64,000 nt of DNA from contig NIVC01001902.1 in NCBI GenBank assembly GCA_002269645.1, positions 82,893-146,892 of the forward strand. The letters run 5' to 3'. Each line of letters begins with the position of its first letter. The first letter of the stretch is position 1. Below the pieces are notes generated by a model. That model made no database searches. It had not been told where the DNA came from and saw nothing but the letters and a program-made list of their open reading frames with translations. The position numbers and the translations under genes are program-made. Positions 18,569 to 57,787 of this stretch are shown in pieces. Source of the stretch: Macrostomum lignano (taxonomy: Eukaryota).

Positions 18569-18735
18569 CTACGAGAAAAAACACTAAATTAAAAAAGTGC
18601 AAGTGAAAAGCAACAAGGCAAACGATCTCTGTATTGTAAGCACAAAAAATGGCGTATAAAAATTACAAAAAAACAAGCACAGACAGGACAGAAGGCACGC
18701 AAATCGTCAATCCAGCTTATTTGCAGTAGGAATCA

Positions 18736-19137: not shown

Positions 19138-19167
19138 CTGAAAAAGAGGGATGAGGGATTATCAGTC

Positions 19168-21220: not shown

Positions 21221-21281
21221 TAATTATTATGCCATTGCCTCAGAAGAAGCAATTTCAAAAATAAAAAACGCAAAAGCGCAC

Positions 21282-21842
21282 CTGAACGCAGCGGACGCAC
21301 TTGGACTGGACAGCGGGCGCATCGTAGAACCTGGCCAGAACAGCAAGTTCGGCCACACAGAATAGACTGACTCGAACTCCGGAGCACGGCTGCAACAATG
21401 ACAGGAAGCTGTGCAAATCTCTCGGATGAGGCGGCGGCTCCGGCAGCGCCAGGCTCAATAGTCGAGAGTCGAATTTTGAGCATTCAGAAGCGGCGTCCGT
21501 GGAGGCAGCGGCGGCAGCAGCCCGGCTGTGGGCTCGGAACATGGCGGCATCAGCGTAGAAGCGATGCTTGGGCAGGTCCAGGCAGAGCAGACGCTGAGAC
21601 GGACCGTCTGGCGGCGGGGGGACGAGGTGACTGACGGAGCAGTCGGACACGCTGGGGACGAGAGTCTCGCTGGCTGAGCGAACGTGCAGCGTCAGGGACA
21701 GCGGCAAGCAGGGCTCGTGACTGCGATCGGACCGGTTCACGAGGCGGAGGCTGCAGTGGGCGCGCAGATCGGGCCATTGGATTAGCAAGGCCTGGTCTAG
21801 GCAGGGCCGGTCCGTACTCAGCGACTCTTCCGCTTGCAATAC
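21282..21842 (-). CDS. MATH-BTB-BACK gene, exon with end of MATH and BTB/POZ domain
   Basis: LLCLDLPKHRFYADAAMFRAHSR...LHSFLSLLQP...VSLFCVAELAVLARFYDAPAVQSKCVRCVQ fits the BTB pattern; acceptor cccag at 21843 and donor GTGCGC at 21281, both phase 0. Confidence 0.78.
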
Positions 21843-21884
21843 CTGGGCGCGTTGGAGAGACTTTGGCTGCTTATGTTTGATTAT

Positions 21885-21990
21885 CGGATTATCGGATTGT
21901 GGATCTGGATTATCGGATTGGGGATCTGGATTATCGGATTTGGGATCTGGATTATCGGATTTGGGATTTGGATTATCGGACTTGGGATCT
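21885..21990. repeat. Short GGATTATCGGATTTGGGATCT repeat inside intron 21843-22099
   Basis: Direct reading. Confidence 0.8.
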
Positions 21991-35416: not shown

Positions 35417-36355
35417 CCCCAGCTTCATCTGCAGCTTCCTGTTCAGCAGGCGGCGTCCGTCGCTTCTGTCGCCGAGCAGCCTCCAAAAGTCGTCGCTGAC
35501 AACAAAGACCTCCTCAAACAGGAGCGCCACGTTGCCGATGGCAGCTACAAAGATTTTAACGATGATTTCGACAACAACGACGACGACGGTAGCGATGAAG
35601 CCCGCAGCATCCGACGCGAGGCGGCCAGCCGCTACCGGCGGAACCACCGCCTGCTCATGCAGCTGCTGTCGCCAGACTGTTGCCTCCCGTCGCTGCCGCC
35701 GCCGTCGCCGCAGGCTCTGCTAGCCGCAATGTCGCCGCATCGGCTTCACCAGCAGTTCCTGTTGGAGCGTCGGCTCTTGACCGCCGCGCACGAGCTGCGC
35801 CAGCTGGAGTCGGCCGGCGAGTCCCGACTGCGCCGGTTCCGCGCTCTGGCCGACGCCCACGCCGCCGCCTGGTCGGCCGTTCCTAGCGCCGTTCCTAGCG
35901 CCGATTCTGGCGCCAGCAGCGGCGGCGCCGTCCGGTTCATCGGCGAAACTGTCGGTCCGGCCAGCCCGCCGCCACCGCCGCCGCAGCCTCCGCAGCAGCC
36001 GCATCAAACCATGCCGCCGCCGCCAGCCCCGTCGTCGCAGCTGCAGTCTTCAAAAGCTTCGTCAACAACGCCGAAGCGGCAGCCGAAAGCCAAAACTGCT
36101 GCTGCTGCTGCTGTTGCCGGAGGCGGAAGCGGCCGGGCAAAACCGGGCAGGAAGCGGGCCCAGCCTCCGCCGCCGCCGCCGCCGCCTCCGCCCCAGCCGC
36201 AGCAGCAGCAGGTGCAGCTGTCGCTGTATCGACAGGCGCCGCCGTCGGTCTCTGGCCAACTGCCGGTCGCGGCTGCTCCGGCAGCTCAGCCTCTGTTCCA
36301 GTCGGGCCAGCAGCTGTTCCAGTCCACTCAGTCTGGCGTGGTGTCTCTGGCTATT

Positions 36356-36387
<32 letters not shown>

Positions 36388-36409
36388 GCAGCATTTTCAC
36401 CTACAATAG
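35417..36409 (+). CDS. SMARCE1: SMARCE1/BAF57-like, exon 3 (NHRL motif, coiled coil, polyP/polyQ tail)
   Basis: Acceptor tttcag, phase 0; ASRYRRNHRLLMQLLS matches TARFQRNHRLISEILS; open to TAG at 36409. Confidence 0.82.
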
Positions 36410-36494
36410 TCAAAGCTTTCATATCCATACTCAGATTTTATAATTTTCTCTAGATTAATTGAAAATTCAAACCATTAGTCTATCGTAGTTTTTA

Positions 36495-36533
36495 GATAGA
36501 CAGATAGATAGATAGATAGATAGATAGACAGAC

Positions 36534-36589
<56 letters not shown>

Positions 36590-36646
36590 GGATAGATATA
36601 TAGATAGATAGATAGATAGATAGATAGATGGATAGATAGATAGATG

Positions 36647-36681
<35 letters not shown>

Positions 36682-36724
36682 GGAAAGATAGATAGATAGA
36701 TAGATGGAAAGATAGATAGATAGG

Positions 36725-36785
<61 letters not shown>

Positions 36786-36786
36786 G

Positions 36787-36837
<51 letters not shown>

Positions 36838-36890
36838 GGATAGATATATAGATAGATAGATAGATAGATAGATGGATAGATAGATAGATG

Positions 36891-36945
<55 letters not shown>

Positions 36946-36946
36946 G

Positions 36947-37025
<79 letters not shown>

Positions 37026-37044
37026 GGAAAGATAGATAGATAGG

Positions 37045-37113
<69 letters not shown>

Positions 37114-37132
37114 GGAAAGATAGATAGATAGG

Positions 37133-37193
<61 letters not shown>

Positions 37194-37194
37194 G

Positions 37195-37257
<63 letters not shown>

Positions 37258-37266
37258 GGATGGATG

Positions 37267-37325
<59 letters not shown>

Positions 37326-37372
37326 GGATGGATGGATGGATAGATAGATAGATAAGTAGATAGATAGGTCGA
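36495..37372. repeat. (GATA)n microsatellite with GGAAA/GATG interruptions
   Basis: Direct reading. Confidence 0.98.
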
Positions 37373-37769
37373 CAGTTAGACAGATAAATAAACTAGAATC
37401 GAACCCATTCTAATTCCATGCGTCAATACTTCCGCTTTAGTTCATTTGCGTTTATATTTTTGAAGTTGTTAAGATTCTCTGTTTCTATTGCCAAAGAGTT
37501 CTTTGCTATTAGTTAAAATGCCTAATTCTAAATTTCTAGTTCTGAGGGTAAACTTTTGCGTTATCTTGTTTTGGCTAGCCAGTATCGATTTAATCGAATA
37601 AAACTCAGCTCACGTGCCAGCTAAAAATTTCACGTTTTAGATTCTGATTTTTGTAACACCTCACTGCAGTGCTAACAGTTACTCGATGTGGAGCTTCATG
37701 GTATCGAGATTTGTATCCATGCTAACAATTCATTACATTTGCTAATTACGATGTCACTTATTTTCTCAT

Positions 37770-38822
37770 CCATTGAGCATAGATTAGCAATCCATGGTAT
37801 AGCTCTTCATCTATTGGGCATAGATTAGCAATCCATGATGTACTTTCTCATCCATGGGGCATAAATTAGCAATCCATGATGTACTGCCTCATCCATTGGG
37901 CATAGATTAGCAATCCATGATGTACTGCCTCATCCATTGGGCATAGATTAGCAATCCATGATGTACTGCCTCATCCATTGGGCATAGATTAGCAATCCAT
38001 GATGTACTGCCTCATCCATTGGGCATAGATTAGCAATCCATGATGTACTGCCTCATCCATTGGGCATAGATTAGCAATCCATGATGTACTTTCTCATCCA
38101 TTGGGCATAGATTAGCAATCCATGATGAACTTTCTCATCCATGGGGCATAGATTAGCAATCCATGATGAACTTTCTCATCCATGGGGCATAGATTAGCAA
38201 TCCATGATGTACTGCCTCATCCATTGGGCATAGATTAGCAATCCATGATGTACTGCCTCATCCATTGGGCATAGATTAGCAATCCATGATGTACTGCCTC
38301 ATCCATTGGGCATAGATTAGCAATCCATGATGTACTGCCTCATCCATTGGGCATAGATTAGCAATCCATGATGAACTTTCTCATCCATGGGGCATAGATT
38401 AGCAATCCATGATGTACTGCCTCATCCATTGGGCATAGATTAGCAATCCATGATGTACTGCCTCATCCATTGGGCATAGATTAGCAATCCATGATGTACT
38501 GCCTCATCCATTGGGCATAGATTAGCAATCCATGATGTACTGTCTCATCCATTGGGCATAGATTAGCAATCCATGATGTACTGCCTCATCCATTGGGCAT
38601 AGATTAGCAATCCATGATGTACTGCCTCATCCATTGGGCATAGATAAGCAATCCATGATGAACTGCCTCATCCATTGGGCATAGATAAGCAATCCATGAT
38701 GTACTTCTTCACCCATTGGGCATAGATTAGCAATCCATGATGTACTTTCTCATCCATTGGGCATAGATTAGCAATCCATGGTATAGCTCCTCATCTATTG
38801 AGCATAGATTAGCAATCCATGA
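37770..38822. repeat. 41-bp minisatellite (CATTGGGCATAGATTAGCAATCCATGATGTACTGCCTCATC)
   Basis: Period of 41 measured. Confidence 0.97.
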
Positions 38823-39384
38823 TGTAGTTGAGCAGAAACTGGTCCAGCTACAGTCACAGAGCTTCCATCAAGCAGGCTCGCTAAAATTCATCATAAATTT
38901 CATAATAAATTTAAGTGGCTTAATTCCAGAGCTTCTAGATTTTATCGATGTATTGAGAAATTTTTGAGTAGACTATCGGTTATATGTTTACTAATTGTTT
39001 AAACTGACTAGCGCTTCCAATAGCCAAGCATTGGCCACGATTTCTTGTTTCATTTCTCTTCACTACATTCAATATTTTGCCAATTGTTTTGTTGTCAACT
39101 TTTTGTTAGTTATTAATTAACAATTATTAGTTTGTCAGTATTTTTCATCGCTGCAATATTTTTTCATATCTCCCTAACTCTGTTTTGCCTTCCACAGAAA
39201 TTTATGCATGCCAAATTTCCCTAGAATACAAAATTAAAAGCTCAGTTTAGATTATTAAATTTCTCTAATGCTGCAACTTTGTTCTTTGATTTTGCTGATG
39301 CAGACTGTTTCTGCATCAGAGACTAAAATAGATATATTCTTTTTTGTCTTGCTTTTATTTTTCTGTTCTGCTTTGTGTCATCAG

Positions 39385-39690
39385 GATAGGAGTACTTTGT
39401 GTCATCTAAATAAGAGTACATTGTGTCATCTAAATAAGAGTACATTGTCATCAGAATAGAAGTACATTGTGTCATCTAAATAGAAGTAGATTGTCATCAG
39501 AATAGAAGTACATTGTGTCATCTAAATAGGAGTACATTGTCATCAGAATAGAAGTACATTGTGTCATCTAAATAGGAGTACATTGTCATCAGAATAGAAG
39601 TACATTGTGTCATCTAAATAGGAGTAGATTGTGTCATCAGAATAGGAGTACATTGTGTCTCCTATAGGTCATCTAAATAGGAGTAGATTG
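39385..39690. repeat. Alternating 22/24-bp minisatellite (GTACATTG(TG)TCATC...AATAG)
   Basis: Direct reading. Confidence 0.88.
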
Positions 39691-40985
39691 TCAGAATATA
39701 AGAGGAGCACGACTAAAGTGCTTTCGAGGCGTCCCTGGGCATCCTGCATGATCACAAGTCCAGGGCACCGGAAGGACTAGAATGATGAATAGATCGAGCT
39801 CGACTGAGTTGCTTGCTATGTCTGTCTTGAAGACAAGAGACACTAATTGCATTGCATGAGATGCATTGCTTTACTCGTAATTAGACCTGCTAGACTCGCC
39901 CCAAATTTTGTTTTGTTATTGTCCCCGGGGGCAGCAGCAGCTTCAAATATGCGAGCAACTAGTTGGTTTGCTTAAAAGAAACCAAATTCGCAATCTACTT
40001 TTAAACAGGGCTGTTTTGCTAACCTACCATTTGTGTGCCAGTTAGTTTGCAGGGCGTCAAATAAAACTCCAACTCCGTTAGCCTTGAGCACACAGATATA
40101 TAAGTACATGTACGCAGGCACGCTCTATCGATGGATGTACAGCCGTCCTGACTCTCCTATCGTCAGGCAGTGTACACTCTCTATGCCTCGGGCGGGCTGG
40201 CCAACATGGAATGGAATTGTGCAACGAACCCCGGGCCAAATTATTGTGGCCGGGCCTGGAGAGTCGACCCTGAGTACTTCGGTACAAGTGTCAGACTTTT
40301 ATGAGCCATTGGCACAGCATCACCGAGAAAGAAAGAGACAGTGAGGAGGGGGCACAGTGCGAATCTTGCGCTAACTTGAAGTGCATCTGAGAATTTTCCA
40401 TTTAGAATTGTTTACCGCACTCGGAATTGGAAAATTCCACAGGCCATGCAGCCCCTTCAATTTCAATGGAATAAAAAAGTGGTCCGATGCGGATACCACA
40501 GAGAGACGCGATGCGAGATGAGTGCGGGCACAATCTGTATAAATAGGATAGAAGTTGAGAGTAGAAATGCGCCGCTATAAACTGGTTAAAGAACTGTTTT
40601 AAGCGGACTGCTCACTACCGGCACTGCTGCGCTGCTTTCTGCTAATCGCTGCTAACAACAGAGGAGGTAGGTGAAACTTTTGAATTTTTTTCTTTTTGAT
40701 TATGTTTTTTTATTTCCGACTGATTTTGATCAAAATATCGGTTTATATTCTAACAAATTCGAACTTGGAAGAACTTGAAAGATGATTCATTTTTGCTGTG
40801 TAATCGCAGAGCTTCATGACCTCTGATCATGCAGCGACTTTGTCTCACAACCAGCACTGAGGCAACTCTGCCCATTCCGCTGGACTCCTAAGGACATACA
40901 AGCGCGCCGATACTGTACGCAGGCACGCACTCATACACACGCTCACACAGGGTGTACAGCGGCCCTTTGACTTTCTAATCGTCAG

Positions 40986-41706
40986 GCTTGATGTCCTGCT
41001 GCCCCAGAGTCGTGGCGCCGAGAAAAGGCCTTTAGCAAACAACTTACCAAAGTGCTTTGCAAATCTTCTGATGCTAGGAGTTCCTCTTGAGATTCTCGAC
41101 GGCGACGCTGGAAACATCCCGTCTGCCTGGATCTCTGCTATCCTCAACAGCTGCCAGGAGCTGGTCGGTGACAAGAAGATCTACGTTATCTCCGTGCTCG
41201 GTCTGCAGAGCTCAGGCAAGTCCACTCTGCTCAACACCATGTTCGGACTGAAGTTCGCAGTGAGCGCAGGTCGCTGCACTCGAGGCGCATTTCTGCAGCT
41301 GGTTCCGGTGGAGTCGGGAATGCCGTTCGACTATGTCGCTGTGCTCGACACCGAGGGTCTTAGAGCTCCGGAGCTGGGTCTGGACAAGCATCACCATGAC
41401 AACGAGCTGGCTACACTGGTCCTCGGACTGGGCGACGTGACCATCATCAACATCAAAGGAGAGAACGCTGCGGAGATAAATGAGATTCTGCAGGTTGCGA
41501 TTCACGCCTTCATCAGGATGAAAATGGCAAAGAAAGATCGAGATCTGCACAGACACTGCATCTTCATACACCAGAATGTAGCAGCGGCTGGAGCAGAAGA
41601 GATGATGCAGGAAGCGACATTTTGTAACTTTGTAACGTTCTACCTTTTGCTTAATATGCCCGCACTCTTTATAAAGTTTAGTTACATCTGCAATACCATG
41701 TTTTAG
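40986..41706 (+). pseudogene. Partial VLIG/GVIN copy: G-domain only, open frame (pseudogene or alternative exon)
   Basis: GLQSSGKSTLLN (G1), AVSAGRCTRG (G2), DTEG (G3); 41077-41621 is near-identical to 46736-47280; possible acceptor ttctaatcgtcag at 40985. Confidence 0.8.
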
Positions 41707-42489
41707 TTCTGATGCCAGCTATTGAAAAGCTTATGTACTTTCATGTAAGTTAATTTAACAACTTAGTGATTATCTAAAAGGAACAAATATTAATGAATTC
41801 GCTAATTACCTGTACTACTGATCAATTCAATAGTAACTGCACTATAATTTTAATCCAACCATAGCCTACTGTACACTCATATGTGCTCAACAGTTTCCTT
41901 GATTACTAATCTAATACTACGAGTATCATCTCACTTCAAAACGAGTCCTAATTCGGGTGTTTCTATCTGTTTATTTGGTTTTATTTATTTCTTTGTATTC
42001 CTTGAATTATGAAGTACGTAAGGTACAGTGTATAATAGTTTTCTTGAAAGCAGTTTATTCGCTATGGATATAGATTTATTAACATTTAGGAAACAAAGTC
42101 CGTGTTTTAATCGATTTTGATGAACCGAAACCATCCCAAAATTAATTTTCAGTTCCTGCTGTTTAATAGCCTGAAACAAGTCGATACAGACACATGGCAG
42201 AGGGGCATTCAAGATGCCCCTGGTGCAGCGAACCGGTTCTCCGTGCTGACTCTCAGAACGCAGCCGGCCTTAGCTGGCACAAACGCTGCCTGCGGCGCGG
42301 TAACGGTAAGTGAACCAACGATCGTGGCAGTCTGACCAGTTACGAGCTAGCTTTTATATCATACCGCACACTTTTGCCTACACCTGCATATTTAATGCGC
42401 AGCACTTTATAAAAATTCTGAATCTGTAAGAGGTCACTGTTTTTGTTATTTTACATTTGGATAGTTACTGACTTCGTAGTTACGAGGGC

Positions 42490-44230
42490 CCCTATCGCAA
42501 CCCCAAGGTAAAAGAAACCAAGGCTTATCCCTGGGGTAGCGCCCAGCCCCCGCCAGTAGTCGGCAGGTTCGCTGAGGGGGCATCGGCGATATTCATCGGG
42601 TCGGTATCTCGAACGAAGACGAAGAGATCACGGATGTCGACCAGCAAGATTGTCAGCTCGTCCATCCACTGGAGTTTGTCGAGGTGTTTGTACCGCGCCT
42701 TATTGAAGTAAGGGCAGAAGGTGACGTGATGCTCCGCGGTCTCCTCTTCTATGCCACAAAAGACGGTCGGTCTATGCCTCGAGGTCGGTTCTGCTAAGTG
42801 AGATCAGATAATCTGCAGAGACTTTCCTGTTCTGGTTAGGCATTGTAGACCGGGTCTGCCTGTAGTCGGTGCAACTGTTCTAGTGGAGTTTGTGTTGCTG
42901 GTGGAGCCACCTGGATTTGCGACCTAGGCTGAGTAGCCTCATCCGATGTTGGTTGCGGTCTTGGTTGCTGCCCTCTTTGGTGAGAGAATCTGCGAGCTCG
43001 TTGCCCAGGATATTGTTGTGACCGGATGTCCAGATGGTACTCGTACTGCAGACTGGCTTTAGTAGAGGTGAGAGAAGGCTTGACCACTACACAGCTTTGA
43101 GTGTCAATATATATTTAGTGATCGATATTTGTGTGGGGTGGACTTGCGCCGCGCGGGGGGCGGCGGGAAGTCAGCCGTCGGCAGGTGCTTGAGGTCCATG
43201 ATGCGGCGCATACCTGCACCTGCTGCTGGAACATCAGCTCAGCAGGGGCCGCTCCAGTGTTTGTGTGCGGCGTGCTTCGGTAGGCCTCCAGCCAGTTTTA
43301 GAGTTGAACCAGTCGGATTTCTCAATGCTCGCGATGCTTTTTGATGGATGGTTGATGCGCTCGATGACTCAATTTGCTGCTGGCTGCTGGTGATGGGCGC
43401 TTTTGTTGCAGAGGAAGTCGTGGTAGGCTTGCGAGCTGAACGGAGGCCCGTTGTCTGAGACGAGCTGCGCTGGTCTGCCGAACGTGGAGAATAGCTTCCT
43501 TCCGTAGCTGCTTTGTGACGGCCTCGGCTGTCATGGACGACATGCGTACTACTATCTGGTAGCGGGAGAAATGGCGAGTAGATGCTTGTTTTGCACTGAC
43601 CTAGTGAAATAGGTTGTTTTTTATGAGGGCGATGGCCCTGGGGGTGTCGTTCACACAATGATACAGAGCCTGATAGCCTGGAGGCTTTCCCTTGGGGTTG
43701 TACCGCTCCTGGATGAGGTAGATGTCAACATCCTTGTTGCCAAAGGTGTCTGAAAGGTTTTTAGAAGCTGCGAAAGCGAGGTTCAGGTTGATCTGAATAA
43801 TGTACAGGTTAACTGGTTGCTTCGTCGCAGGCGGTTTATTTATCTGGTTGCGTGTGGCAGTGTCACCATTCGGCTGGCCTGCAGGGTTCGCCTCGGAGTC
43901 TTGCCCCTAGCTTGGCACAAGGTTTGGAACGGCATGACTCGTCCCCAGAGCGATCCGATCTCGCAAACTCCCCTCGGCGACGATCTCCGGCTGGGCGACG
44001 CCTGGGCAGCAGTTGGAAGACAATGCCGGTGTAGGCAGAAAAAATCGCTTTTCTTCAGAGCGTCTGCCCACCCGCGGAGAAACTCTTGTACAGGCCAGGG
44101 TTTTGCCAGGGCGTCTTTTAACTGAATCTACTGAATTCTGTCCTAAGGTAGGTCGGGGTTCTTGCTGAGGAGCAGAGCTCGGGTCGCCCCGATGTTTCTT
44201 GAGCCACGAGGCTCAACGAGTCAACGTTTA
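42490..44230 (-). mobile_element. Degenerate LOA/R1-like non-LTR retrotransposon lacking RT
   Basis: Minus-strand motifs: LLSKNPDL (ORF1 end, ~44170); IIQINLNL...DVDIYLIQE (APE endonuclease, 43605-43816); IWTSGHNNILGNELADSLTKEG (RNase H, ~42970-43040); FCGIEEETAEHHVTFCP (zinc knuckle, ~42700-42770). Confidence 0.8.
43140..43575 (-). mobile_element. Gypsy-type integrase core fragment embedded in the LINE
   Basis: FSRYQIVVRMSSMTAEAVTKQLRK / LFSTFGRPAQLVSDNGPPFSSQ / VIERIN / AYRSTPHTNTGAAPAELMF across frameshifts. Confidence 0.78.
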
Positions 44231-44482
44231 GAGGGGCGACTTTATTATCATTAACTATAGTTAATTTAATTTAATTTAAGTCGCTTTCTGGGAATAAAAC
44301 TTAACGACTATCTGTAGAAAGTAAAACAGTGAAAATTGCTTGAAAATTCCCACGAGTACTGTATGTTCTCAAGAAAGACAATTAGAAAACAACTGCGTAA
44401 ATACCTTTTCTGAGAATATACGCTCGTACCAGCGTATTTACCGCACGACTTGTGCACAATAGATTCTCAACTTTTATACAGC

Positions 44483-47400
44483 ATGCAAGAGACAGCATTT
44501 CCATTGACAATTTTAGATGCAGAGGTCCGTCTATCAAATGCTGCATTGAAGGCCAAGGAAATGCTTTCGGAAAAGCATCCTGAATATGCATCCACTGCGT
44601 TTCTGAACGTTATAGAGTCGTATTTAAGAAAGAAAAATATTGTTACATTGGACTCATTAGAAGCCATCGACTATGAGCTGATTAGGAAGCTCGCTGGAGA
44701 TGAGGAAAGCAACCAAGTCTTGACGGATCTCTTTACTAAGCTGCATAAAATTATTAGGCCAACCAGTTCTATCGCAGACAGAAAGAAAATGTTTGAGGCA
44801 ATGACGCAACAAAATTCAAAGAAGCGATTCAGCACAATAAAGCAATCTGTTCCGGTACAGAAAGAGTTGGGTACATCGTCGACTACTCAACAATCGCTAC
44901 CGCTATCCCCAAGGCCAGTGTCGAAGCTTGAACTTCCAGCGCCACCTGTTCCTACTCCTCGAAAAAGACAAGGCTCGATGCCAAATCGACCAAATGTCAA
45001 CCCGCAGTCAACAACACCACGAGTTGCAGAACCGAGAAAGCCAAAGCAATTTGGATCAGTTCAAGAAACTGTTGAACATCTCGGGCTGAAGTCTTATTAT
45101 CCAGAGAGAATCTCGCGCAAGGACGTTCTTTTCGTCAGGAGAAGCCAAGACGAGCGCAGAAATTTGAAAGAAAACTCCGTTGCCTGGCAAGTCATCCGCG
45201 CACTCATCAGCTGCGACGCACAGGGGAGAAATTTGGTTTCAGAGACGACGGCACCGGCTTTACCGAAAAAAATGTCACTTTTAAACCTCGAGGACGATGA
45301 TGAAGGCAGCTCTGAGAATGAGCTGAACCCGATGGATATCTTACTTGCGAGCTACCTCTGCTGTGACAAAGAGGTGCAACAGATGCTCTGCAAAGCTTTG
45401 TTTGCTTGCAAGCTGGCTTTCCCATTCATCTATTCAACTGTTGGGAAGCCTCTGGTCATGGGCAGCTGGAGCCTGAAAGACATTGTAGTTCAGTTCATTA
45501 ACGAAAATGGCCAGTACATAGAGACCAGCCTGATGACAGATTATCATTTCCCGGTGGTATCATTTGTGAGGATCGGAGATTTGCCTGTGTCCAAGTCCAA
45601 GTTGCTGAACTCCCTACTCAATGGCACCAGTCATGAGACGTTCTTCCACAGAGACTGCACCAACGGCCACGCGCGCAGAGTCTGCAGCAATGGACTCGTT
45701 GAGGCCACCGTGTTTCTGCCGTCCAGAAACAATAAACTGACTCGAGCCTTCTTGGCAACAAACCTCAGAGGTGACTTGCTGGATTTTCGAGACAAATATC
45801 AGGTTTTAACTTCGGCCTCCAAAGTTTTAGTTGTCTTTGTGGACGTCAGCACCCTTTCACAGCCCGAGTGCTTCAGCCAGCTTCAAAGCATGTCAAAAAT
45901 CAAGGAATTGGAAGTGATAGTGGTTCTCTACAGATCTCAAACACTCACAAATCCGTTGAGTAGCGAGTCGATGAGCATCCTTAAATCATTTTCCTGCGTT
46001 GACACAAAGAAAGGAAGACCAGAGCGTGAAGTAGTTGGCGAAATCCATCAAAGGCTTTCAGAGTCATTGGCAAAGGACGGTATGGAGCAGAAAGCTATCG
46101 GAGAAATCAAAGTTGACTTTGATGACGGTTCTCTCGTTTCTCAGGCAAGACAGCTTTGCAGCTTCATCTTTGCAGAGGTAACGAAATGCGGAATCATGAA
46201 CTTAAAGAAGAAGCATCTTCCTCTGCAAGAAAAATGGATGGACTACAGTCGCCACTACAAAAAAGAAAACTCTTCTAAGGCAACAGATGAAGCAAAGTTA
46301 GAAGCTCAGCATCAGCGTTTTAAAGCCAGACGCCAGCAAATGGGTCTGTACGATCAACTCAGCCCCATTATGGAGGAGTTTCTTACCACACTGACAAAGA
46401 TTGCTGACAATGAGCTTCTGGTTAAGCTTTGGCTTCAGTGTATTCGATCTTTCTTCGACACTTCTAGAGAGCATTTGCCAAAGCTTCAAAAAATGCAGAA
46501 GGAATTGCGGCAGCAAAAAGAAACTGCAGATGAATCATCCCTAACAACGATAGATGATCAGCTCAAAGAACTTGGCCATCAAATACTGCTTGCTTCAATT
46601 GGCCTGGAAAACCTATTCAGAGAGGCGGGCCAAGTCTACGAGGCCAGTTTAGCAGCCTCTTTAGAAAACGCAAAGACTTTCCGAGCGCTTGACATCAATC
46701 TGTTTCCACGCGTGATGGCCAAACTCTTGCTGTGCGGAGTTCCTCTTGAGATTCTCGACGGCGACGCTGGAAACATCCCGTCTGCCTGGATCTCTGCTAT
46801 CCTCAAGAGCTGCCATGAGCTGGTCGGTGACAAGAAGATCTACGTGATCTCCGTGCTCGGTCTGCAGAGCTCAGGCAAGTCCACTCTGCTCAACACCATG
46901 TTCGGACTGAAGTTCGCAGTGAGCGAACGTCGCTGCACTCGAGGCGCATTTCTGCAGCTGGTTCCGGTGGAGTCAGGAATGCCGTTCGACTATGTCGCGG
47001 TGCTCGACACCGAGGGCCTGAGAGCTCCGGAGCTGGGTCTAGAAAAGTATCACCATGACAACGAGCTGGCTACATTGGTCATCGGACTGGGCGACGTGAC
47101 CATCATCAACATCAAAGGAGAGAACGCTGCGGAGATGAATGAGATTCTGCAGATTGCGATTCACGCCTTCATCAGGATGAAGATGGCAAACAAAGATCGA
47201 GATCTTCACCGACATTGCATTTTCATACACCAGAATGTAGCAGCGGCTGGAGCAAAAGAGATGATGCAGGAGGCGACATTCAAGATACAACAGAAACTCG
47301 ACAACATGGCGAAGGAGGCGGCTGAAGAAGAAGGTCTCCATGACGTGAAGCGTTTCGGAGACATTTTGCAGTTCAACAGAGACACCGATATTTTCTTCAT

Positions 47401-49774
47401 GTCAGATCTGTTACAGGGCGATCCTCCCATGGCTCCAGTGAATCCAGGCTACTCCATGGGTGTTCAAGAGGTTAAGCAGCACCTTTTACATATTCTTGAT
47501 GAAGAACAGAAGCGCTATCTGGGATTCAGCGACTTTTCTCATCGAGTAAATGATTTGTGGAAGGCCATACTGTCTGAGGACTTTGTGTTTAGCTTTAAAA
47601 GCAGTGTCGAACTCAAAGCTTATAACATGATGGAGAATAAATTTCTCGAAATAAAAAATCACATTGAAGAGTTGAGCGAAGACTGGCTTCATAGATCGGC
47701 TGCGATTCCCGTTAGAAAATGCGAAACGGTCAGTGCTGTCGCAGATGCGCAGCAGAGGGCGATAAGTGAGCTTCGTGCTATGCTTGAAACTTGGCAGCAG
47801 CAAGGTCTGAATTCCTTAAACCTATTTTTGGATAAGAACCAGTACAGTGAGTACACCATACAATGGAAGGAGCGAAAGTTAGTGTCCCTAAGGGATTGCA
47901 TCAAAAGTCTAGAACAGTCACTTCGGCAGAAACTCCAATTCTTGTGCGACGGGCAAAAAGTTGAGCTTCAGCAAGGTTCACGGACGGAGGAGTGGGAGTC
48001 TAAGATCATAAGACGGGCCACCGAACTTGCACCCACGCTAAGGAGCAGTCCAAAAGAGAAAATTCTGCAGGAATTCGAAGCTCTGTGGCAGGAGCTCGCG
48101 CAGCAGCTGCCATCTGGGAGAACGGTCGAGTTGGGACCTGTTGAGAGCCAAGTCGCAGATCAACTGCGAGAGATCTACTATAAAGAAAAAAAATATGTTG
48201 GCATATTTTTGGAGCAAATTCCATTAAAGAAACAAATAGCGGGTCGAAGTGATAGCTTACTTGAAATTCTGTTTCCCAAAGGAGACACTGTTCAGCTTAT
48301 TATGCGTTCGAGAACCGACAAACTCAAATCTCTTGTTTCCAACCAGGCAGAAGAAGAGCGCAATCTAGTAGTAGACGTTGTATCTGACATTCTCAAGGCC
48401 GTCCAAAGTCTTTGCGAGGACATGAGGGAGGAGTCGACAGGATTCTCAAGGGTTCATGTTAATCGGGTAAAAGATTGCGTGCGTGATGCCATAAACTCCT
48501 CTGTCAGACTATCGAACAATCAAATCGGCACAACACGCGCATTCGAAATCAAGGTAGTGGTCCTCGCCCTCAGCACTGCGTACCCAACATTTGAGCAGAT
48601 TGCGCAGAATTTTTACGAAGTGGTTACGAAGACAAAGATGTTGAACTTATTTGAAAACATTGTCCGCCGGCAGGCCGAAGCCAAGATTGTTGCTGATTTC
48701 ATTCGTGACCATCTGTACTCGGTGATGAAACAGGCTTTCCATGAAAGAATGGCGGGTAAATTGAGAGGAGTAATGCGGAACGAGATCGGCAGGACAAAGT
48801 ACCAGCTCATTGTTCGCATGCTAACGGACATGGCACAGAGAGATGACGCAGAATCGATCCTTGAATACGTGAGAGATTCCCATACTACTGCTCTGAAATG
48901 GCTGACGCAGTTCATAAACCGTCAGCTGTTTCAGAGAACATCGGATGGCAACAGTGTATTTTCAGGCCATCTTGAGTCATCGCTCATTGCGCCGATAATT
49001 GCGGTGACTGAAGAAGCAGCAAGAGTGGCGGCAACTCGGTGCACCTCGCTGACAGTTTGGGTCGATGAATTCTGTAAAGAAATAAAAAAAGAGTTCGTTG
49101 TGCTTTCTAGACACTTACAGCATGTCTGCACTTTCGAATCTACTGTAAAAGTGGAAGATATGTTGAAGCATTTTTTAGGCGGCCTGGGCGACCTCAAGTC
49201 CTCACTGGTGAAGCACTTCGCTAGTATGGACGAGTCAACAGTCAGATGGCATGGAGACTCTACTCTCTATTCCGATGTGCTTCAGAGCCTCTGGGGCTGC
49301 AAAGAACGCTGCCCCTTCTGTAGCGAGCCGTGCTGCAAGTCTCAGGAAAATCACCACGAAAAAGACGGCAGCCCACATTGCTGCATTCAGCACAGACCGC
49401 ATGGAGTGAATGGTGTTTGTTATATTGGAACTGACCAGTTAAAATTTGAAAACTGTGAATGTCTTACATGTAGCGGTGACAGATTTTCATGTTTGATTTG
49501 CAAGCGAAGGGGTAAACAGACGCCAAACTGTCGAGGAGACGACAGCGAACAAGAAGTGTATCACCCTTACAAAGAGTACAAAAAGTACTTTCCAGAGTGG
49601 GAGATTGATCCCGACGCAGGAAACGATTCGGCAAAGTTTTGGCACTGGTTCTCGTGGACATTTAAGGACAAGCTGCAGGCGAAGCATCGAAAAGGAATCG
49701 AACAGCTGCCTCCGACCTGGGCTCTGATTTCCAAGAAGGAGGCGATCGACAGCCTGCGCTTCTTATTGGATTGA
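44483..49774 (+). CDS. Very large inducible GTPase (GVIN1/VLIG/URGCP family), ~1763 aa, single large exon
   Basis: Uninterrupted ORF with HLGLKSYYPERI start of the VLIG core, G1 GLQSSGKS, G3 DTEG, a helical region and a C-terminal Cys/His cluster CPFCSEPC...HRPHG; acceptor ttttatacag just before ATG 44483. Confidence 0.93.
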   Translation: MQETAFPLTILDAEVRLSNAALKAKEMLSEKHPEYASTAFLNVIESYLRKKNIVTLDSLEAIDYELIRKLAGDEESNQVLTDLFTKLHKIIRPTSSIADRKKMFEAMTQQNSKKRFSTIKQSVPVQKELGTSSTTQQSLPLSPRPVSKLELPAPPVPTPRKRQGSMPNRPNVNPQSTTPRVAEPRKPKQFGSVQETVEHLGLKSYYPERISRKDVLFVRRSQDERRNLKENSVAWQVIRALISCDAQGRNLVSETTAPALPKKMSLLNLEDDDEGSSENELNPMDILLASYLCCDKEVQQMLCKALFACKLAFPFIYSTVGKPLVMGSWSLKDIVVQFINENGQYIETSLMTDYHFPVVSFVRIGDLPVSKSKLLNSLLNGTSHETFFHRDCTNGHARRVCSNGLVEATVFLPSRNNKLTRAFLATNLRGDLLDFRDKYQVLTSASKVLVVFVDVSTLSQPECFSQLQSMSKIKELEVIVVLYRSQTLTNPLSSESMSILKSFSCVDTKKGRPEREVVGEIHQRLSESLAKDGMEQKAIGEIKVDFDDGSLVSQARQLCSFIFAEVTKCGIMNLKKKHLPLQEKWMDYSRHYKKENSSKATDEAKLEAQHQRFKARRQQMGLYDQLSPIMEEFLTTLTKIADNELLVKLWLQCIRSFFDTSREHLPKLQKMQKELRQQKETADESSLTTIDDQLKELGHQILLASIGLENLFREAGQVYEASLAASLENAKTFRALDINLFPRVMAKLLLCGVPLEILDGDAGNIPSAWISAILKSCHELVGDKKIYVISVLGLQSSGKSTLLNTMFGLKFAVSERRCTRGAFLQLVPVESGMPFDYVAVLDTEGLRAPELGLEKYHHDNELATLVIGLGDVTIINIKGENAAEMNEILQIAIHAFIRMKMANKDRDLHRHCIFIHQNVAAAGAKEMMQEATFKIQQKLDNMAKEAAEEEGLHDVKRFGDILQFNRDTDIFFMSDLLQGDPPMAPVNPGYSMGVQEVKQHLLHILDEEQKRYLGFSDFSHRVNDLWKAILSEDFVFSFKSSVELKAYNMMENKFLEIKNHIEELSEDWLHRSAAIPVRKCETVSAVADAQQRAISELRAMLETWQQQGLNSLNLFLDKNQYSEYTIQWKERKLVSLRDCIKSLEQSLRQKLQFLCDGQKVELQQGSRTEEWESKIIRRATELAPTLRSSPKEKILQEFEALWQELAQQLPSGRTVELGPVESQVADQLREIYYKEKKYVGIFLEQIPLKKQIAGRSDSLLEILFPKGDTVQLIMRSRTDKLKSLVSNQAEEERNLVVDVVSDILKAVQSLCEDMREESTGFSRVHVNRVKDCVRDAINSSVRLSNNQIGTTRAFEIKVVVLALSTAYPTFEQIAQNFYEVVTKTKMLNLFENIVRRQAEAKIVADFIRDHLYSVMKQAFHERMAGKLRGVMRNEIGRTKYQLIVRMLTDMAQRDDAESILEYVRDSHTTALKWLTQFINRQLFQRTSDGNSVFSGHLESSLIAPIIAVTEEAARVAATRCTSLTVWVDEFCKEIKKEFVVLSRHLQHVCTFESTVKVEDMLKHFLGGLGDLKSSLVKHFASMDESTVRWHGDSTLYSDVLQSLWGCKERCPFCSEPCCKSQENHHEKDGSPHCCIQHRPHGVNGVCYIGTDQLKFENCECLTCSGDRFSCLICKRRGKQTPNCRGDDSEQEVYHPYKEYKKYFPEWEIDPDAGNDSAKFWHWFSWTFKDKLQAKHRKGIEQLPPTWALISKKEAIDSLRFLLD

Positions 49775-51287
49775 GTTGCTCGTTACTTGCGTTGGTCCTG
49801 AAGGCAGGAACTGTGTTTAAATGCACGCTTATCTATTGGAGCTAAAACTCGTAAATATTCTGTTTGTGTAAGTGTGCCTGTGTGTACAGTATTATTTTTT
49901 AGTGTGCGCGGAACAGCAAGAAATTTTGTTTTTTTTGAGAAAAATTTGATTTTTCTTTCACGATCAGCACATAGTGAGGAAATACGAAAATGTTCAGCAA
50001 GATTCCATGCACGTGTAAGCTGGGAAGGATTTCTCAAACTCATGTTAAGAGTTTGGGCACGGACTTAGGATTGGTATATTTTTATAGCTAGCTATAGCAA
50101 GGCTGCTTTCGAGGGTGGATCGGAGCACTATATTTTGAAATTCCCTCTTAAACTTCGGTATATGTATAGCAAGCAGATCATGCATCAAGGGAGATTTCAT
50201 AAATCCTTCGTTTAGGTAATTGCGATTGCATTGCAGTAGTACAAGCTGTAAACTGTTGTTTACAAGCGCTAAACTTAAAAACCGCTAAACCTTTGCATTG
50301 TTTCCATTAAGCATGAATGATAGCTAGCTATTTCTAAAAAAAATGTTTTCGCCTTTCGTGTTCAGCTTTCCGACAAAATTTTTGTTTGTTTCTGCAAATT
50401 TAAAATTTTAATGTCCTGTTCATAATGTCGATCGTACTAATTTTTTTTGCTCCATGTATGTATATTTAACTCAGAATCTATACTTTGAAGTTTATTTGCG
50501 CCAAATGAACTTTAATACAATAATATTTTAGAGATTTCAAGTTTATTTGATTTAAAATGAAGTTTCGTATCGGATTCTTCTCGTTGTTAAACACTTAATT
50601 ATTGTGTGATTTTGAATTTTGTATCCTTAGCTGACGGCAATTATAGTTTTGCTGATAAACAGTTTTCCAATAAAAGTGCATAGATATAAATTTTGATTTG
50701 CTGTGATAAATATTCTTTCGTTTGCAAAAATAAAAAATCATCTAGCTGTATTCATTCTTGAATCCATTTTAACGCAGAAATTGAAGCACTTAGCAACGAT
50801 TATAAACTACATGTACGTTAAGTACTAATTGGAAGTAGTGCGTTTGCCTCTGTACTTTGGAACTCAATAATGAACAACTAAAGTGTAGTAGGAAGCCTTT
50901 CAGATTTCAATGGTAGGCTTTTGCTACAGACGCAAAAGTACAAATGCGAGATATGATTTTTTAGCTTCTTAGCACAATTTATATGTTACTTAATTAGATT
51001 ACGCTGCTTCTGAATTTCATTTACAAACGCAATGAGTATAGCTATATGCCTATGTGTTTTGTTGAAGTGGAAGCCCCACATCAATTGTTGGGTGGCTCTG
51101 GCACCTGGGCTGAGGTTTTGGCGCAGGGGGATCTGCACATTGGATTTGAGCACGCGGTTTTCACATCTCCCACTGGCTCCCACATCTTAATAAAATTTCC
51201 ACTTGATTCGCCTACTTCTCCCTGCGACGCTGCTCTGTTCCCGGTTTTGTTCCCCCTTCCCAGCCACCCAGCTTTTCCCTCAGCATC

Positions 51288-51530
51288 ACTCCCCCTCAGC
51301 ATCACTCCCCTTCAGCATCACTCCCCCTCAGCATCACTCCCCCTCAGCATCACTCCCCCTCAGCATCACTCCCCCTCAGCATCACTCCCCCTCAGCATCA
51401 CTCCCCCTCAGCATCACACCCCCTCAGCATCACTCCCCCTCAGCATCACTCCCCCTCAGCATCACTCCCCCTCAGCATCACACCCCCTCAGCATCACACC
51501 CCTCAGCATCACTCCCCCTCAGCATCCCTC
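51288..51530. repeat. 16-bp minisatellite (CAGCATCACTCCCCCT)
   Basis: Direct reading. Confidence 0.95.
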
Positions 51531-51566
51531 CCTCTCGGAATCACTCGGAATCAAGATGACGCAACC

Positions 51567-54500: not shown

Positions 54501-54981
54501 GGCTAGCCAACGTTTTTTTCAAAGGACTAGTAAGACGCTCGTCAAAACTCCCACCAATACCGACGACATCCCATGATAGAAAGCTTCGGAAGTTAGATGC
54601 TCAGTAGGTGAAGTTCCAGCGTTTCCTTTATGTACGAGCTACTGATTGTTTGTGTCGTCTTGTCCTTGGAGTTCCGTATTTGCTTCTATCTTCTTGCCGT
54701 TGGAGTTTCATCTTTGCTTTCATCTTTTATCTTCTTGCCGTTGGAGTTTTTTTGTTGATATGGCGGTTACTTTATTGTAAATACATTGTAATTATATCAC
54801 TGGTTCCTATTCTTTAAATTAAATACTCGACATTGCCTCGCTTTACTATTTAATCTAACCGTTAATGCCTGATAGCAGAGAAGACTTGAAAAAGCCATAG
54901 AACAATACTTTTAAGCGAGCCCCTCAGATTTTTTGCCATGAATTGGCTCGTTTCGCGTCCCGAGGGTTTTAGTTGTCCCTG
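51567..54981 (+). mobile_element. P-superfamily (THAP transposase) DNA transposon, complete ends
   Basis: Perfect 116-bp TIRs (51567-51682 and 54866-54981; CAGGG...CCCTG); flanking direct repeat GACGCAACC on both sides. Confidence 0.95.
51765..54577 (+). pseudogene. THAP9/P-element-like transposase, 4 exons, disrupted
   Basis: THAP CSVFPC...FPRD...W...CVKHW is split by intron 51900-52004; further introns 52147-52236 and 54142-54234; FDEM, SDNHPTN, FDFVHIIKCIRNNW, YIAGY and LSRGKL motifs; frameshifts (~52955, ~53897, ~54270, ~54500) and a stop at ~53420. Confidence 0.88.
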
Positions 54982-57230: not shown

Positions 57231-57787
57231 GTTAATTATATTTGGGGCTGAATTTGAATCTCGGCTTGGCTTTGCTCGTACAATTAACGCCCTTGATGGC
57301 CAACCCCCAAGGCACAGTGAAGTGTACATGCCTAACGATAAATAAATTTTGGGCCGCTGTACACTCCTGTGTGAGTGTGTGCCTGTGCGTCTGACTGTGT
57401 ACGCATCCGCGCGCTTGTATGCCTGCTCAGGGGAGTCGGCGGAATAGGCAGTAATGCCTCTCACCGGATGTGTGACAATGTCGCTTGAAGTGCGCCGGGG
57501 TGCACACAGCACCATAAAACCTCAGCAATTTGAATTTGAACAGAGTGATTTGAATCGATCAGAAAAGTGCAGATTCCCTGTATGTAAAAAAGTAAGTGTG
57601 AGAGAAAAATCGTCGGATTCAACCAAAAGATGTTCAGGGACGGTCCCAGCGCCTTCTCCAATATATTTAACACAAAATCGAGCCAATACAAAATCGATAT
57701 TTTGCCAGTCAAGTCAAAGAATGTCAACGCATCCGCTAGGAAACAAAAAGATGGCAATCGCTGAGCCGCATAAATCCGTTGACGTCG

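What the first reader, a model, noticed from the sequence alone, without database searches (positions are those of the whole stretch)
40861..47280. Second VLIG G-domain upstream of the intact gene looks like a gene-conversion tract in an older paralog
The 545-nt tract 41077-41621 is near-identical to 46736-47280, and DNA identity stops abruptly at both ends. Just 5' of the breakpoint the protein stays homologous (NNLPKCFANLLMLGVPLEILDGD vs NLFPRVMAKLLLCGVPLEILDGD) although the DNA has diverged. This suggests an older VLIG paralog whose G-domain was overwritten by conversion, rather than a simple partial duplication. The frame is open from 40861 to 41706 and has a good acceptor at 40985. It could act as a donor cassette diversifying the G-domain, or be expressed as a G-domain-only exon or regulator.
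Basis: partly seen in the sequence, partly recalled or inferred. Interest (0 to 1): 0.72.

Follow-up and report, generated by a model that had tools for sequence, protein, structure and literature searches.

The report
Dead VLIG paralog remnant with converted G-domain
The second G-domain is a 604-bp leftover of an old, otherwise deleted giant-GTPase (VLIG) gene in the flatworm Macrostomum lignano; its G-domain had been homogenised with the neighbouring paralog by gene conversion before the gene was lost, which is an ordinary pseudogene story.

Summary
Window 41077-41621 matches 46736-47280 without gaps (24 mismatches in 545 nt, 95.6%). The window is the end of Macrostomum lignano contig NIVC01001902.1. 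A paralogous locus on another contig carries two intact tandem VLIG genes: g1 (P0123) and g2 (P0122). They are 43% identical as proteins and saturated at silent sites, except for an 862-nt G-domain tract where dS is about 0.1-0.3. The window fragment (41018-41621) is the remnant of g1. Its 59 nt upstream of the tract are g1-type (2 mismatches to sister g1, about 37% identity to any g2). It sits collinearly between g1-upstream and g1-downstream sequence. Three corrections apply. The conversion tract is a property of the intact g1/g2 pair. The abrupt 3' end at 41621 is a 3.26-kb deletion junction, not a conversion boundary. The open frame upstream of 41018 is not VLIG. Substitutions private to the relic are 6 non-synonymous to 2 synonymous (neutral-like), against 5:17 in the intact genes. 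The relic lies outside the transcript-based g2 model, and none of its private changes appear in the adjacent g2. It is most likely a young, decaying pseudogene, not a donor cassette or a G-domain-only gene.

The parts
40530..40990 (+). 5' flank of the relic. Two blocks (40530-40623 and 40888-40990) are collinear with sister-locus sequence 2.3-3 kb upstream of intact g1 (S7005-7106, S7645-7745). 40833-40990 is also a dispersed repeat (inverted copy at 57351-57485).
41018..41076 (+). R0: g1-specific coding remnant (…EKRPLANNLPKCFANLLML). It has 2 mismatches in 58 aligned nt (3 gap columns) to intact sister g1 and about 37% identity to either g2. The 5' deletion junction is at about 41017/41018.
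41077..41621 (+). Converted G-domain tract of the g1 relic (P-loop GLQSSGKS, DTEG). It is 95.6% identical to the window g2, 96.7% to sister g2 and 91.2% to sister g1. It covers Pfam URGCP_GTPase profile positions 135-333 of 396.
41471..41575 (+). 'Island' within the tract. Intact sister g1 keeps ancestral g1-type sequence here (67.6% identical to the relic). The relic carries g2-type sequence (95% to sister g2, 92% to window g2). This shows at least one conversion event not shared by the two g1 lineages.
41622..41632 (+). 11-nt filler (TTGTAACTTTG) at the 3' deletion junction. Relative to the sister locus, 3,259 bp are missing (S16929-20187: the 3' half of g1 plus about 750 bp downstream).
41633..42193 (+). 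Former g1-g2 intergenic region, now the sequence immediately upstream of g2 (69-74% identical to sister S20188-21000).
42194..42305 (+). g2 exon 1 (start codon plus half a LIM domain, MAEGHSRCPWC…WHKRCLRRGN), with donor GT at 42306. A Cys present in the L005 and sister copies is Arg in the window.
42306..44516 (+). g2 intron 1. It contains a degenerate retroelement on the minus strand (sub-threshold integrase and RNase H matches). The second LIM exon present in the sister g2 was not found.
44517..49774 (+). g2 giant exon (intact VLIG; P0121; URGCP, URGCP_GTPase and GVIN1_C domains), stop codon included.
46736..47597 (+). G-domain conversion tract in the intact g2 (862 nt; matches sister g1 S16384-17245 at 91%). 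46736-47280 is the part that matches the relic.

Best explanation
The ancestral locus carried two anciently diverged VLIG (giant GTPase) genes in head-to-tail tandem, g1 then g2. Non-reciprocal recombination (interlocus gene conversion) homogenised about 860 nt of their G-domains. The tract starts exactly where alignable G-domain homology begins. The locus was then duplicated (g2-g2 dS about 0.2). The sister copy keeps both genes intact. In the lineage leading to this window, g1 was destroyed by two deletions: about 8.6 kb covering its promoter and 5' half, and 3.26 kb covering its 3' half. What remains is 604 bp: 59 nt of g1-specific sequence plus 545 nt of converted G-domain, stranded about 570 bp upstream of the g2 start codon. 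This happened shortly before the recent whole-genome duplication, because a homeologous contig carries the identical relic. The relic has since drifted neutrally, and it most likely has no function. Shown: the g1 origin, the conversion tract, the deletion junctions and the presence of the relic in other contigs. Inferred: the order of events, and the non-functionality (from the substitution pattern and the annotation only).
For: (1) Organism and loci. The window gene P0121 lies on M. lignano contig NIVC01001902.1, and the sister locus NIVC01002061.1 carries g1 (P0123) followed by g2 (P0122). (2) P0123 contains DKRPLVNNLPKCFANLLMLGVPLEILDGD, the relic's upstream motif. At the DNA level, R0 has 2 mismatches in 58 aligned nt against sister g1 and 36-37 against either g2. 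(3) Collinearity: window 41018-41621 = S16325-16928; 41633-41751 = S20188-20308; 41832-42336 = S20653-21155; g2 = g2; the 5' flank matches S7005-7745. (4) Conversion. g1-g2 dS is saturated outside the tract and 0.28 inside it (0.07-0.26 in the best windows), which equals the g2-g2 value. At same-amino-acid codons, third positions are identical in 87-89% of cases in the tract and 47-50% outside (p about 1e-24). The control paralog P0124 shows 53-54% against 43-51%. dS from the tract to P0124 is about 1.0. (5) Relaxed constraint. Relic-private changes are 6N:2S against 5N:17S for the intact genes (Fisher p=0.028). P(at least 6 of 8 non-synonymous) is 0.004-0.046 under omega 0.1-0.2 and 0.72 under omega 1. 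(6) The same relic with the same junctions is in contig NIVC01000990.1 (L005) and in UniRef model P0001 from another assembly. (7) The transcript-based g2 model P0152 starts at the ATG equivalent to window 42194, downstream of the relic, and no gene is called over the relic in Mlig_3_7.
Against: The relic ORF is still open (211 aa from the ATG at 41071) and retains the P-loop and DTEG motifs. With only about 1.5% private divergence, however, an open frame is expected by chance. An ab initio model (P0001) includes the relic as an exon. The relic's private synonymous branch (2 changes in 127 sites) is shorter than those of the intact genes (about 0.04-0.06), which a simple 'dead since long ago' model does not explain. 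That points to late loss, a late conversion, or inflation of the intact genes' branches by imports from unsampled paralogs. The N:S contrast rests on 8 substitutions. No RNA data could be examined. The 5' synteny partly overlaps a dispersed repeat.
Confidence: 0.82

Rival explanations
1. Plain partial tandem duplication: a 545-nt piece of the neighbouring g2 G-domain was copied upstream and has since diverged.
For: The DNA identity to the neighbour is confined to one ungapped block with sharp ends.
Against: The 59 nt upstream of the block are g1-type VLIG coding sequence, nearly identical to the intact g1 at the sister locus and unrelated at the DNA level to g2. The flanks are collinear with g1-upstream and g1-downstream sequence. 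The relic is closer to sister g2 (18 mismatches) than to its neighbour (24) and lacks 6 changes specific to the neighbour's lineage.
Confidence: 0.02
2. The remnant is retained for a function: as a silent donor cassette for G-domain conversion, as a G-domain-only polypeptide or exon, or as a regulatory or small-RNA element in the g2 promoter region.
For: The open 211-aa ORF has an intact P-loop and G3 motif. It lies about 570 bp upstream of the g2 start codon. It is retained identically in two homeologous contigs. One relic-type state (41422 C) is shared with L005-g2. VLIG copies in this genome are visibly mosaic, so conversion is active. An ab initio model uses it as an exon.
Against: The N:S ratio on the relic branch is neutral-like. 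None of the 5 private sites shared by both relic copies occurs in the window g2 or in L005-g2. There is a single remnant, not a cassette array. It is absent from the transcript-based annotation at both loci. The identity between the two relic copies reflects a 1.8-kb block of 100% identity that also covers non-coding flank, so it is not selection on the ORF. The exact ORF product is not on record in any assembly.
Confidence: 0.08
3. The conversion happened after truncation: the dead fragment itself was overwritten by its neighbour g2.
For: The island 41471-41575 is g2-type in the relic but ancestral g1-type in the intact sister g1, so at least one conversion is specific to the window lineage. 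Two sites at the 5' end of the tract (41088, 41100) group by locus rather than by gene.
Against: The main tract, with the same 5' boundary, is present in the intact sister g1 and extends 317 nt beyond the relic's end. The relic shares none of the window/L005 g2-lineage changes (pattern 110011 at 6 sites; 41551 and 41556 in the island). So any window-lineage conversion was early, probably while g1 was still intact.
Confidence: 0.1
4. Assembly chimera or collapsed paralogs created the apparent mosaic.
For: Mlig_3_7 is a neopolyploid assembly with known collapse and expansion problems (PMC10733133). Window versus L005 shows an abrupt switch from 100% identity to 2-7% divergence near 41460-41600.
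Against: The relic, with both junctions, occurs in two separate Mlig_3_7 contigs, and its 3' junction plus downstream exons occur in a gene model from a different assembly. The g1/g2 tract is also seen between two intact ORFs at the sister locus.
Confidence: 0.02

Closest known systems
Interlocus (ectopic) gene conversion and concerted evolution in tandem immune-GTPase families (GBP, IRG) and other multigene families
   Same: An internal tract of high identity, including at silent sites, lies between two otherwise anciently diverged tandem paralogs. It has sharp boundaries, tract and flanks give conflicting phylogenies, and patches are mosaic among copies. A paper on rodent GBP evolution that discusses gene conversion was found but not read in detail (PMC8863968).
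   Different: The genes here are VLIG/GVIN-type giant GTPases of a flatworm. The tract is restricted to the G-domain of paralogs that are only 43% identical elsewhere. I found no report of conversion in VLIG genes or any description of flatworm VLIGs, but the literature search was limited to open-access text.
Unprocessed pseudogene or gene relic left by deletion after tandem duplication
   Same: It is truncated at both ends relative to an intact paralogous copy, sits in the syntenic position and orientation, shows a neutral-like substitution pattern and is not in the transcript-based annotation.
   Different: It is very young (about 1.5% private divergence), so it has no stop codon or frameshift yet. 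It lies in the proximal upstream region of the surviving paralog.
Vertebrate GVIN1/VLIG-1 (interferon-induced very large GTPase)
   Same: The intact g2 has the URGCP, URGCP_GTPase and GVIN1_C Pfam domains and is encoded mostly by one giant exon. Human GVIN1 is reported to form an antibacterial coat (bioRxiv 10.1101/2025.03.24.645074).
   Different: It is only 26-32% identical to vertebrate and echinoderm proteins. The N-terminal LIM or half-LIM exon was not seen in the Pfam domain lists of the other hits. The function and inducibility of VLIGs in flatworms are unknown.
Pseudogene donor cassettes for diversifying gene conversion (chicken Ig psi-V, trypanosome VSG, Borrelia vls)
   Same: A silent partial copy lies upstream of an expressed, homologous immune-type gene in a family where conversion is active.
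   Different: There is a single remnant rather than an array, no relic-derived variants are found in the adjacent gene, and the relic is evolving neutrally. The resemblance is positional only.

Membership tests
VLIG / URGCP-like GTPase family | Significant match to the URGCP_GTPase domain (PF25683) | tested here: met
   The relic scores 253 bits (cut-off 55) but covers only profile positions 135-333 of 396, so the domain is incomplete. The intact g2 scores 370 bits over positions 8-396.
VLIG / URGCP-like GTPase family | Full architecture (URGCP domain + G-domain + GVIN1_C helical region) | tested here: not met
   This refers to the relic. tblastn with the full g2 protein finds only aa 750-944 at 41038-41622 and no other VLIG segment in the window. 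The intact g2 does have the full architecture.
Interlocus gene conversion tract | Internal high-identity tract flanked on both sides by diverged but homologous sequence | tested here: met
   This holds for the intact pairs: S16384-17245 versus S25383-26244 or W46736-47597 are 91% identical, while the flanks are saturated. In the relic only the 5' boundary is a conversion boundary; its 3' end is a deletion junction.
Interlocus gene conversion tract | Silent-site identity is elevated in the tract relative to the rest of the gene, and is not explained by constraint | tested here: met
   Third-position identity at same-amino-acid codons is 0.87-0.89 in the tract and 0.47-0.50 outside (p about 1e-24). 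The control P0124 gives 0.53-0.54 and 0.43-0.51. dS to P0124 in the tract is about 1.0.
Interlocus gene conversion tract | Phylogenetic incongruence between tract and flanks | tested here: met
   R0 groups sequences by paralog type (g1 versus g2). In R1 all copies are equidistant (95.4-97%). The island groups the relic with g2.
Interlocus gene conversion tract | Donor and direction identified | tested here: inconclusive
   For the island the direction is g2-type into the relic's g1 lineage. For the main tract the direction cannot be determined from the sequences available.
Unprocessed pseudogene (relic) | Truncated copy in the syntenic position relative to an intact homolog | tested here: met
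Unprocessed pseudogene (relic) | Relaxed selective constraint | tested here: met
   6N:2S on the relic branch against 5N:17S in the intact genes (Fisher p=0.028; binomial p=0.004-0.046 under omega 0.1-0.2). The counts are small.
Unprocessed pseudogene (relic) | Not transcribed or translated | not testable with these tools
   The evidence is indirect only. The relic is absent from the Mlig_3_7 gene calls at both loci, the exact ORF product is not on record, but it is included in an ab initio UniRef model.
Diversifying donor-cassette system | Cassette-derived variants appear in the expressed gene | tested here: not met
   None of the 5 relic-private sites shared by both relic copies is present in the window g2 or L005-g2. 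One ambiguous site (41422) is shared with L005-g2.
Diversifying donor-cassette system | Array of multiple silent cassettes | tested here: not met
   There is a single VLIG fragment in the 64-kb window.

The most novel reading that the evidence does not exclude
The G-domain-restricted homogenisation between two paralogs that are otherwise only 43% identical is maintained by selection, for example because g1 and g2 pair through their G-domains as dynamin-like GTPases do. The surviving 604-bp relic, placed 570 bp upstream of the g2 start codon, would then be retained as a conversion template, or expressed as a truncated G-domain modulator of g2.
Probability: 0.05. Interest if true: 0.6.

Novelty: new member of a known kind. 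Interest (0 to 1): 0.25.

Why it matters
It has three modest uses. First, it documents with a clean internal control (an unconverted paralog) that VLIG giant GTPases in an invertebrate undergo domain-restricted gene conversion and mosaic exchange. That affects any phylogeny or orthology call made from the G-domain alone. Second, it flags a UniRef entry (A0A1I8HG08) as a chimeric ab initio model built on a pseudogene relic. Third, it illustrates gene loss and homeolog mosaicism in the neopolyploid M. lignano genome. It does not reveal a new mechanism.

Tried and rejected
(1) My first guess was a fish genome, because VLIG families are large in teleosts. The 99% hit to a M. lignano protein and the contig look-ups ruled that out.

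(2) The two relic copies differ at 2 of 545 sites, while the two g2 copies differ at 17 of 545. That looked like selection on the relic. I rejected this reading because window and L005 are 100% identical over a 1.8-kb block (39671-41461) that also includes non-coding flank, so the pattern is a mosaic or haplovariant block.

(3) Three sites in the island where the window g2 shares the state of sister g1 (41551, 41556, 41562) suggested a reciprocal exchange. I rejected this because they are interleaved with g2-type sites and all are synonymous, so parallel change is likelier.

(4) A third protein search with a 600-aa g1-specific query found no further g1-type copies, only a distant paralog (P0196) whose island region is unrelated.

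(5) Exact-product look-ups for P0001 and for the relic ORF found nothing, and the L005 relic ORF could not be looked up.

(6) An Rfam scan of 36000-51000 found nothing.

(7) Literature searches found no paper on VLIG gene conversion or on flatworm VLIGs.

(8) The alternative that a g1 fragment was inserted, rather than left by deletions, is less parsimonious given its correct order and orientation between g1-upstream and g1-downstream sequence.


Full report
OBSERVATION. Window 41077-41621 aligns without gaps to 46736-47280, with 24 mismatches in 545 nt (95.6%), and similarity falls to chance level immediately outside both ends. The downstream copy lies inside a 1,774-codon ORF (44450-49774) with the URGCP, URGCP_GTPase and GVIN1_C domains, so it is an intact VLIG-type giant GTPase. 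The upstream copy scores 253 bits against URGCP_GTPase but covers only profile positions 135-333 of 396. tblastn with the whole intact protein finds VLIG homology only at 41038-41622, and no other VLIG segment anywhere in the 64 kb. The frame is open from 40861 to 41706. The 24 differences comprise 13 synonymous and 11 non-synonymous changes, 16 of them at third codon positions.

WHERE THE WINDOW COMES FROM. The best database hit to the fragment is a 268-aa UniRef protein of the flatworm Macrostomum lignano (P0001, 99% identical). The next-best hits are at or below about 60%. The intact gene is P0121 on contig NIVC01001902.1 of assembly Mlig_3_7 (GCA_002269645.1), and the window is the last 64 kb of that contig. 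P0001 shares the fragment's 3' junction (…EATFCNF), and its remaining exons map to window 42257-42307 and 42576-42779. It is therefore an ab initio model built on the same truncated fragment in another assembly.

THE KEY COMPARISON. M. lignano has a paralogous locus on contig NIVC01002061.1 with two intact VLIG genes in head-to-tail tandem: g1 (P0123, 1841 aa) followed by g2 (P0122, 1826 aa). P0122 is 85% identical to the window gene, and P0123 only 43%. At the DNA level the window fragment 41018-41621 is collinear with sister g1 (S16325-16928). Its first 59 nt (R0) differ from sister g1 at 2 positions and from either g2 at 36-37. After 11 nt of filler, the window resumes at 41633 with sequence homologous to the sister's g1-g2 intergenic region (S20188 onward, 69-74% identity), then the g2 LIM exon, then g2 itself. 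Relative to the sister, 3,259 bp are missing: the 3' half of g1 plus about 750 bp. On the 5' side, 40530-40623 and 40888-40990 are collinear with S7005-7106 and S7645-7745, which lie 2.3-3 kb upstream of sister g1. This implies a second deletion of about 8.6 kb, with the caveat that part of this flank is also a dispersed repeat. The fragment is therefore a relic of the g1 paralog and not a partial copy of its neighbour.

GENE CONVERSION. Between the intact g1 and g2, synonymous divergence is saturated along almost the whole gene (dS unbounded, dN 0.71). It drops to 0.07-0.26 in windows covering the window-g2 coordinates 46736-47100, rises over a roughly 100-nt island, drops again until 47597, and is then saturated once more. 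Over the whole 862-nt tract g1-g2 dS is 0.28, close to the g2-g2 inter-locus value of 0.21. Protein-level constraint is controlled for by looking only at codons that encode the same amino acid. There, third positions are identical in 87-89% of cases inside the tract and 47-50% outside (Fisher p about 1e-24). P0124, a third paralog of similar overall distance, shows 53-54% inside and 43-51% outside. dS from any of the four tract sequences to P0124 is about 1.0. Strong purifying selection therefore cannot explain the identity, and non-reciprocal recombination between g1 and g2 can. The 5' boundary (41077 / 46736 / S16384 / S25383) is the same in every copy. It is also where P0124 starts to be alignable. 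Conversion thus appears to start where G-domain homology begins.

First, the conversion tract is a property of the intact g1/g2 pair and was not written specifically onto this remnant. Second, the abrupt 3' end at 41621 is a deletion junction, because in intact genes the tract continues for another 317 nt. Third, the relic is not especially close to its neighbour. In R1 (41077-41470) all four copies are 95.4-97% identical to each other in a star-like pattern. The relic is closer to sister g2 (18 mismatches) than to the window g2 (24). It also lacks six substitutions shared by the window and L005 g2 genes. Fourth, conversion histories differ between loci. In the island (41471-41575) the intact sister g1 keeps an ancestral g1-type sequence resembling P0124 and mollusc VLIGs, and neither P0124 nor P0196 is a plausible recent donor of it. 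The relic has g2-type sequence there (95% to sister g2, 67.6% to sister g1). Two sites at the 5' end of the tract (41088, 41100) group by locus, which indicates some within-locus homogenisation after the loci separated.

IS THE RELIC ALIVE? I polarised each substitution in the tract using the other copies. Changes private to the relic lineage are 6 non-synonymous to 2 synonymous, which is the neutral expectation of 3.25:1 (omega about 0.9). Outside the island, the three intact genes together show 5:17 (Fisher p=0.028). The chance of at least 6 of 8 non-synonymous changes is 0.004-0.046 under omega 0.1-0.2. The pairwise dN/dS of 0.25 between the relic and its neighbour therefore mostly reflects constraint on the intact gene's branch. 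The transcript-based model of the homeologous g2 (P0152) begins at an ATG equivalent to window 42194. Exon 1 is 42194-42305 and is spliced to 44517. The relic lies 573 bp upstream of the g2 start codon and outside the model, and no gene is called over it in Mlig_3_7 at either locus. None of the five private substitutions shared by both relic copies is present in the window g2 or in L005-g2. One further site (41422) is shared with L005-g2 only. The still-open ORF carries no weight, because the relic has only about 1.5% private divergence. I could not examine RNA data, so non-expression is an inference.

INDEPENDENT COPIES AND ASSEMBLY. A third contig (NIVC01000990.1, L005; gene P0152) is a close duplicate of the window locus and carries the same relic with identical junctions. 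The two relic copies differ at two sites (41478 and 41596), both non-synonymous changes in the window copy. P0001's tail exons match L005 at 100%. Published work describes Mlig_3_7 as holding about three homeologous copies of most loci with roughly 2% SNP divergence after a recent whole-genome duplication (PMC10733133). That fits window versus L005 as homeologs or haplovariants. The sister locus, with g2-g2 dS of 0.21 and about 70% intergenic identity, is an older duplication. The deletions that made the relic therefore predate the window/L005 split. With three contigs in two assemblies agreeing, an assembly chimera is unlikely. One caution remains. Window and L005 are 100% identical from 39671 to 41461 and then 2-7% divergent through g2. 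This is either a recent homogenisation or a consensus switch between homeologs.

UNRESOLVED. The relic's private synonymous branch (2 changes in 127 sites) is shorter than those of the intact genes (about 0.04-0.06 per site). If g1 had died soon after the loci split, about 50 neutral changes would be expected, and 8 are seen. Three explanations are open. g1 may have stayed functional at this locus until shortly before the whole-genome duplication. Its tract may have been refreshed by a late conversion. Or the intact genes' branches may be inflated by imports from unsampled paralogs, which is plausible given the mosaic patches in g2. For example, at 48006-48770 L005-g2 is 94-98.5% identical to sister g2, while the window g2 is 84-89% identical to either. 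The direction of the main conversion could not be determined.

COMPARISON AND VERDICT. This is interlocus gene conversion with partial concerted evolution between tandem paralogs of an immune-type GTPase family, plus an unprocessed pseudogene relic left by deletions. Both are well-known processes. The particular case appears undescribed in the literature I could search: VLIG genes of a flatworm, with homogenisation confined to the G-domain of paralogs that are otherwise saturated. The functional suggestions have no support. Interest is low to moderate.

Noticed in passing
window 42194-42305 (and sister locus L001 20970-21481): The g2-type VLIG carries an N-terminal LIM domain. The sister g2 has a full LIM domain on two exons (41 bits, above the Pfam cut-off). 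The window and L005 g2 genes keep only the first exon (half a LIM domain), and in the window one Cys is replaced by Arg (CLRRGN versus CLRCGN). A LIM-VLIG fusion was not seen in the Pfam domain lists of the other hits.
   Followed up: partly
window 42450-44250 (minus strand): A GC-rich insert in g2 intron 1 has frameshifted integrase-like (…LVSDNGPPFSS…) and RNase H-like (…GHNNILGNELAD…) remnants. The Pfam hits are sub-threshold (rve E=0.003, RNase_H E=0.013). It is probably a decayed LTR retroelement. P0001's last exon (42576-42779) lies within this insert.
   Followed up: partly
window 48006-48770 and 48773-48972: There are mosaic patches in the intact g2. In the first interval L005-g2 is 94-98.5% identical to sister g2, while the window g2 is 84-89% identical to either. 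In the second interval the window g2 matches sister g2 (98.5%). This suggests further conversion events involving unsampled paralogs. Window versus L005 g2 has dS 0.091, several-fold above the published genome-wide CDS SNP rate of 1.1% between homeologs.
   Followed up: partly
window 39671-41461 versus L005 7700-9500: A 1.8-kb block is 100% identical between the two homeologous contigs and is immediately followed by 2-7% divergence. The switch falls inside the relic's 3' part. It is either a recent inter-homeolog homogenisation or an assembly consensus switch.
   Followed up: no
window 45473-45650: A second, weaker dip in g1-g2 synonymous divergence (dS about 0.7, 80% amino-acid identity, 77% DNA identity) lies in the URGCP domain. 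It may be an older conversion tract or a region of strong constraint.
   Followed up: no
window 49928-57156: A roughly 7.2-kb segment is absent from the sister locus, where the flanks are 26 bp apart. It contains a THAP/P-element-transposase-like gene (51576-53060; Pfam Tnp_P_element E=1e-6) and a 16-bp tandem repeat (51213-51548). It is probably a P-element-type transposon insertion.
   Followed up: partly
window 37759-38955 and 39376-39702: Two tandem-repeat arrays lie upstream of the relic: a 41-bp satellite (more than 17 copies) and a 22/24-bp alternating repeat. Both are also present at the L005 locus.
   Followed up: no
window 40833-40965 versus 57351-57485 (inverted): A pair of inverted copies of about 133 bp (76% identical) of a dispersed element brackets the relic-plus-g2 region about 16.4 kb apart. 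Further copies lie at the sister locus (S7645-7745, S28781-28914).
   Followed up: partly
window 1600-3520 and 17800-21900: GC-rich stretches have long overlapping ORFs in several frames and on both strands and give no Pfam hit. They look like low-complexity or repeat sequence rather than genes.
   Followed up: no
UniRef A0A1I8HG08 (P0001): This database entry ('VLIG-type G domain-containing protein', 268 aa) is a chimeric ab initio model. It joins the g1 relic to part of the g2 LIM exon and to a stretch of a decayed retroelement.
   Followed up: yes
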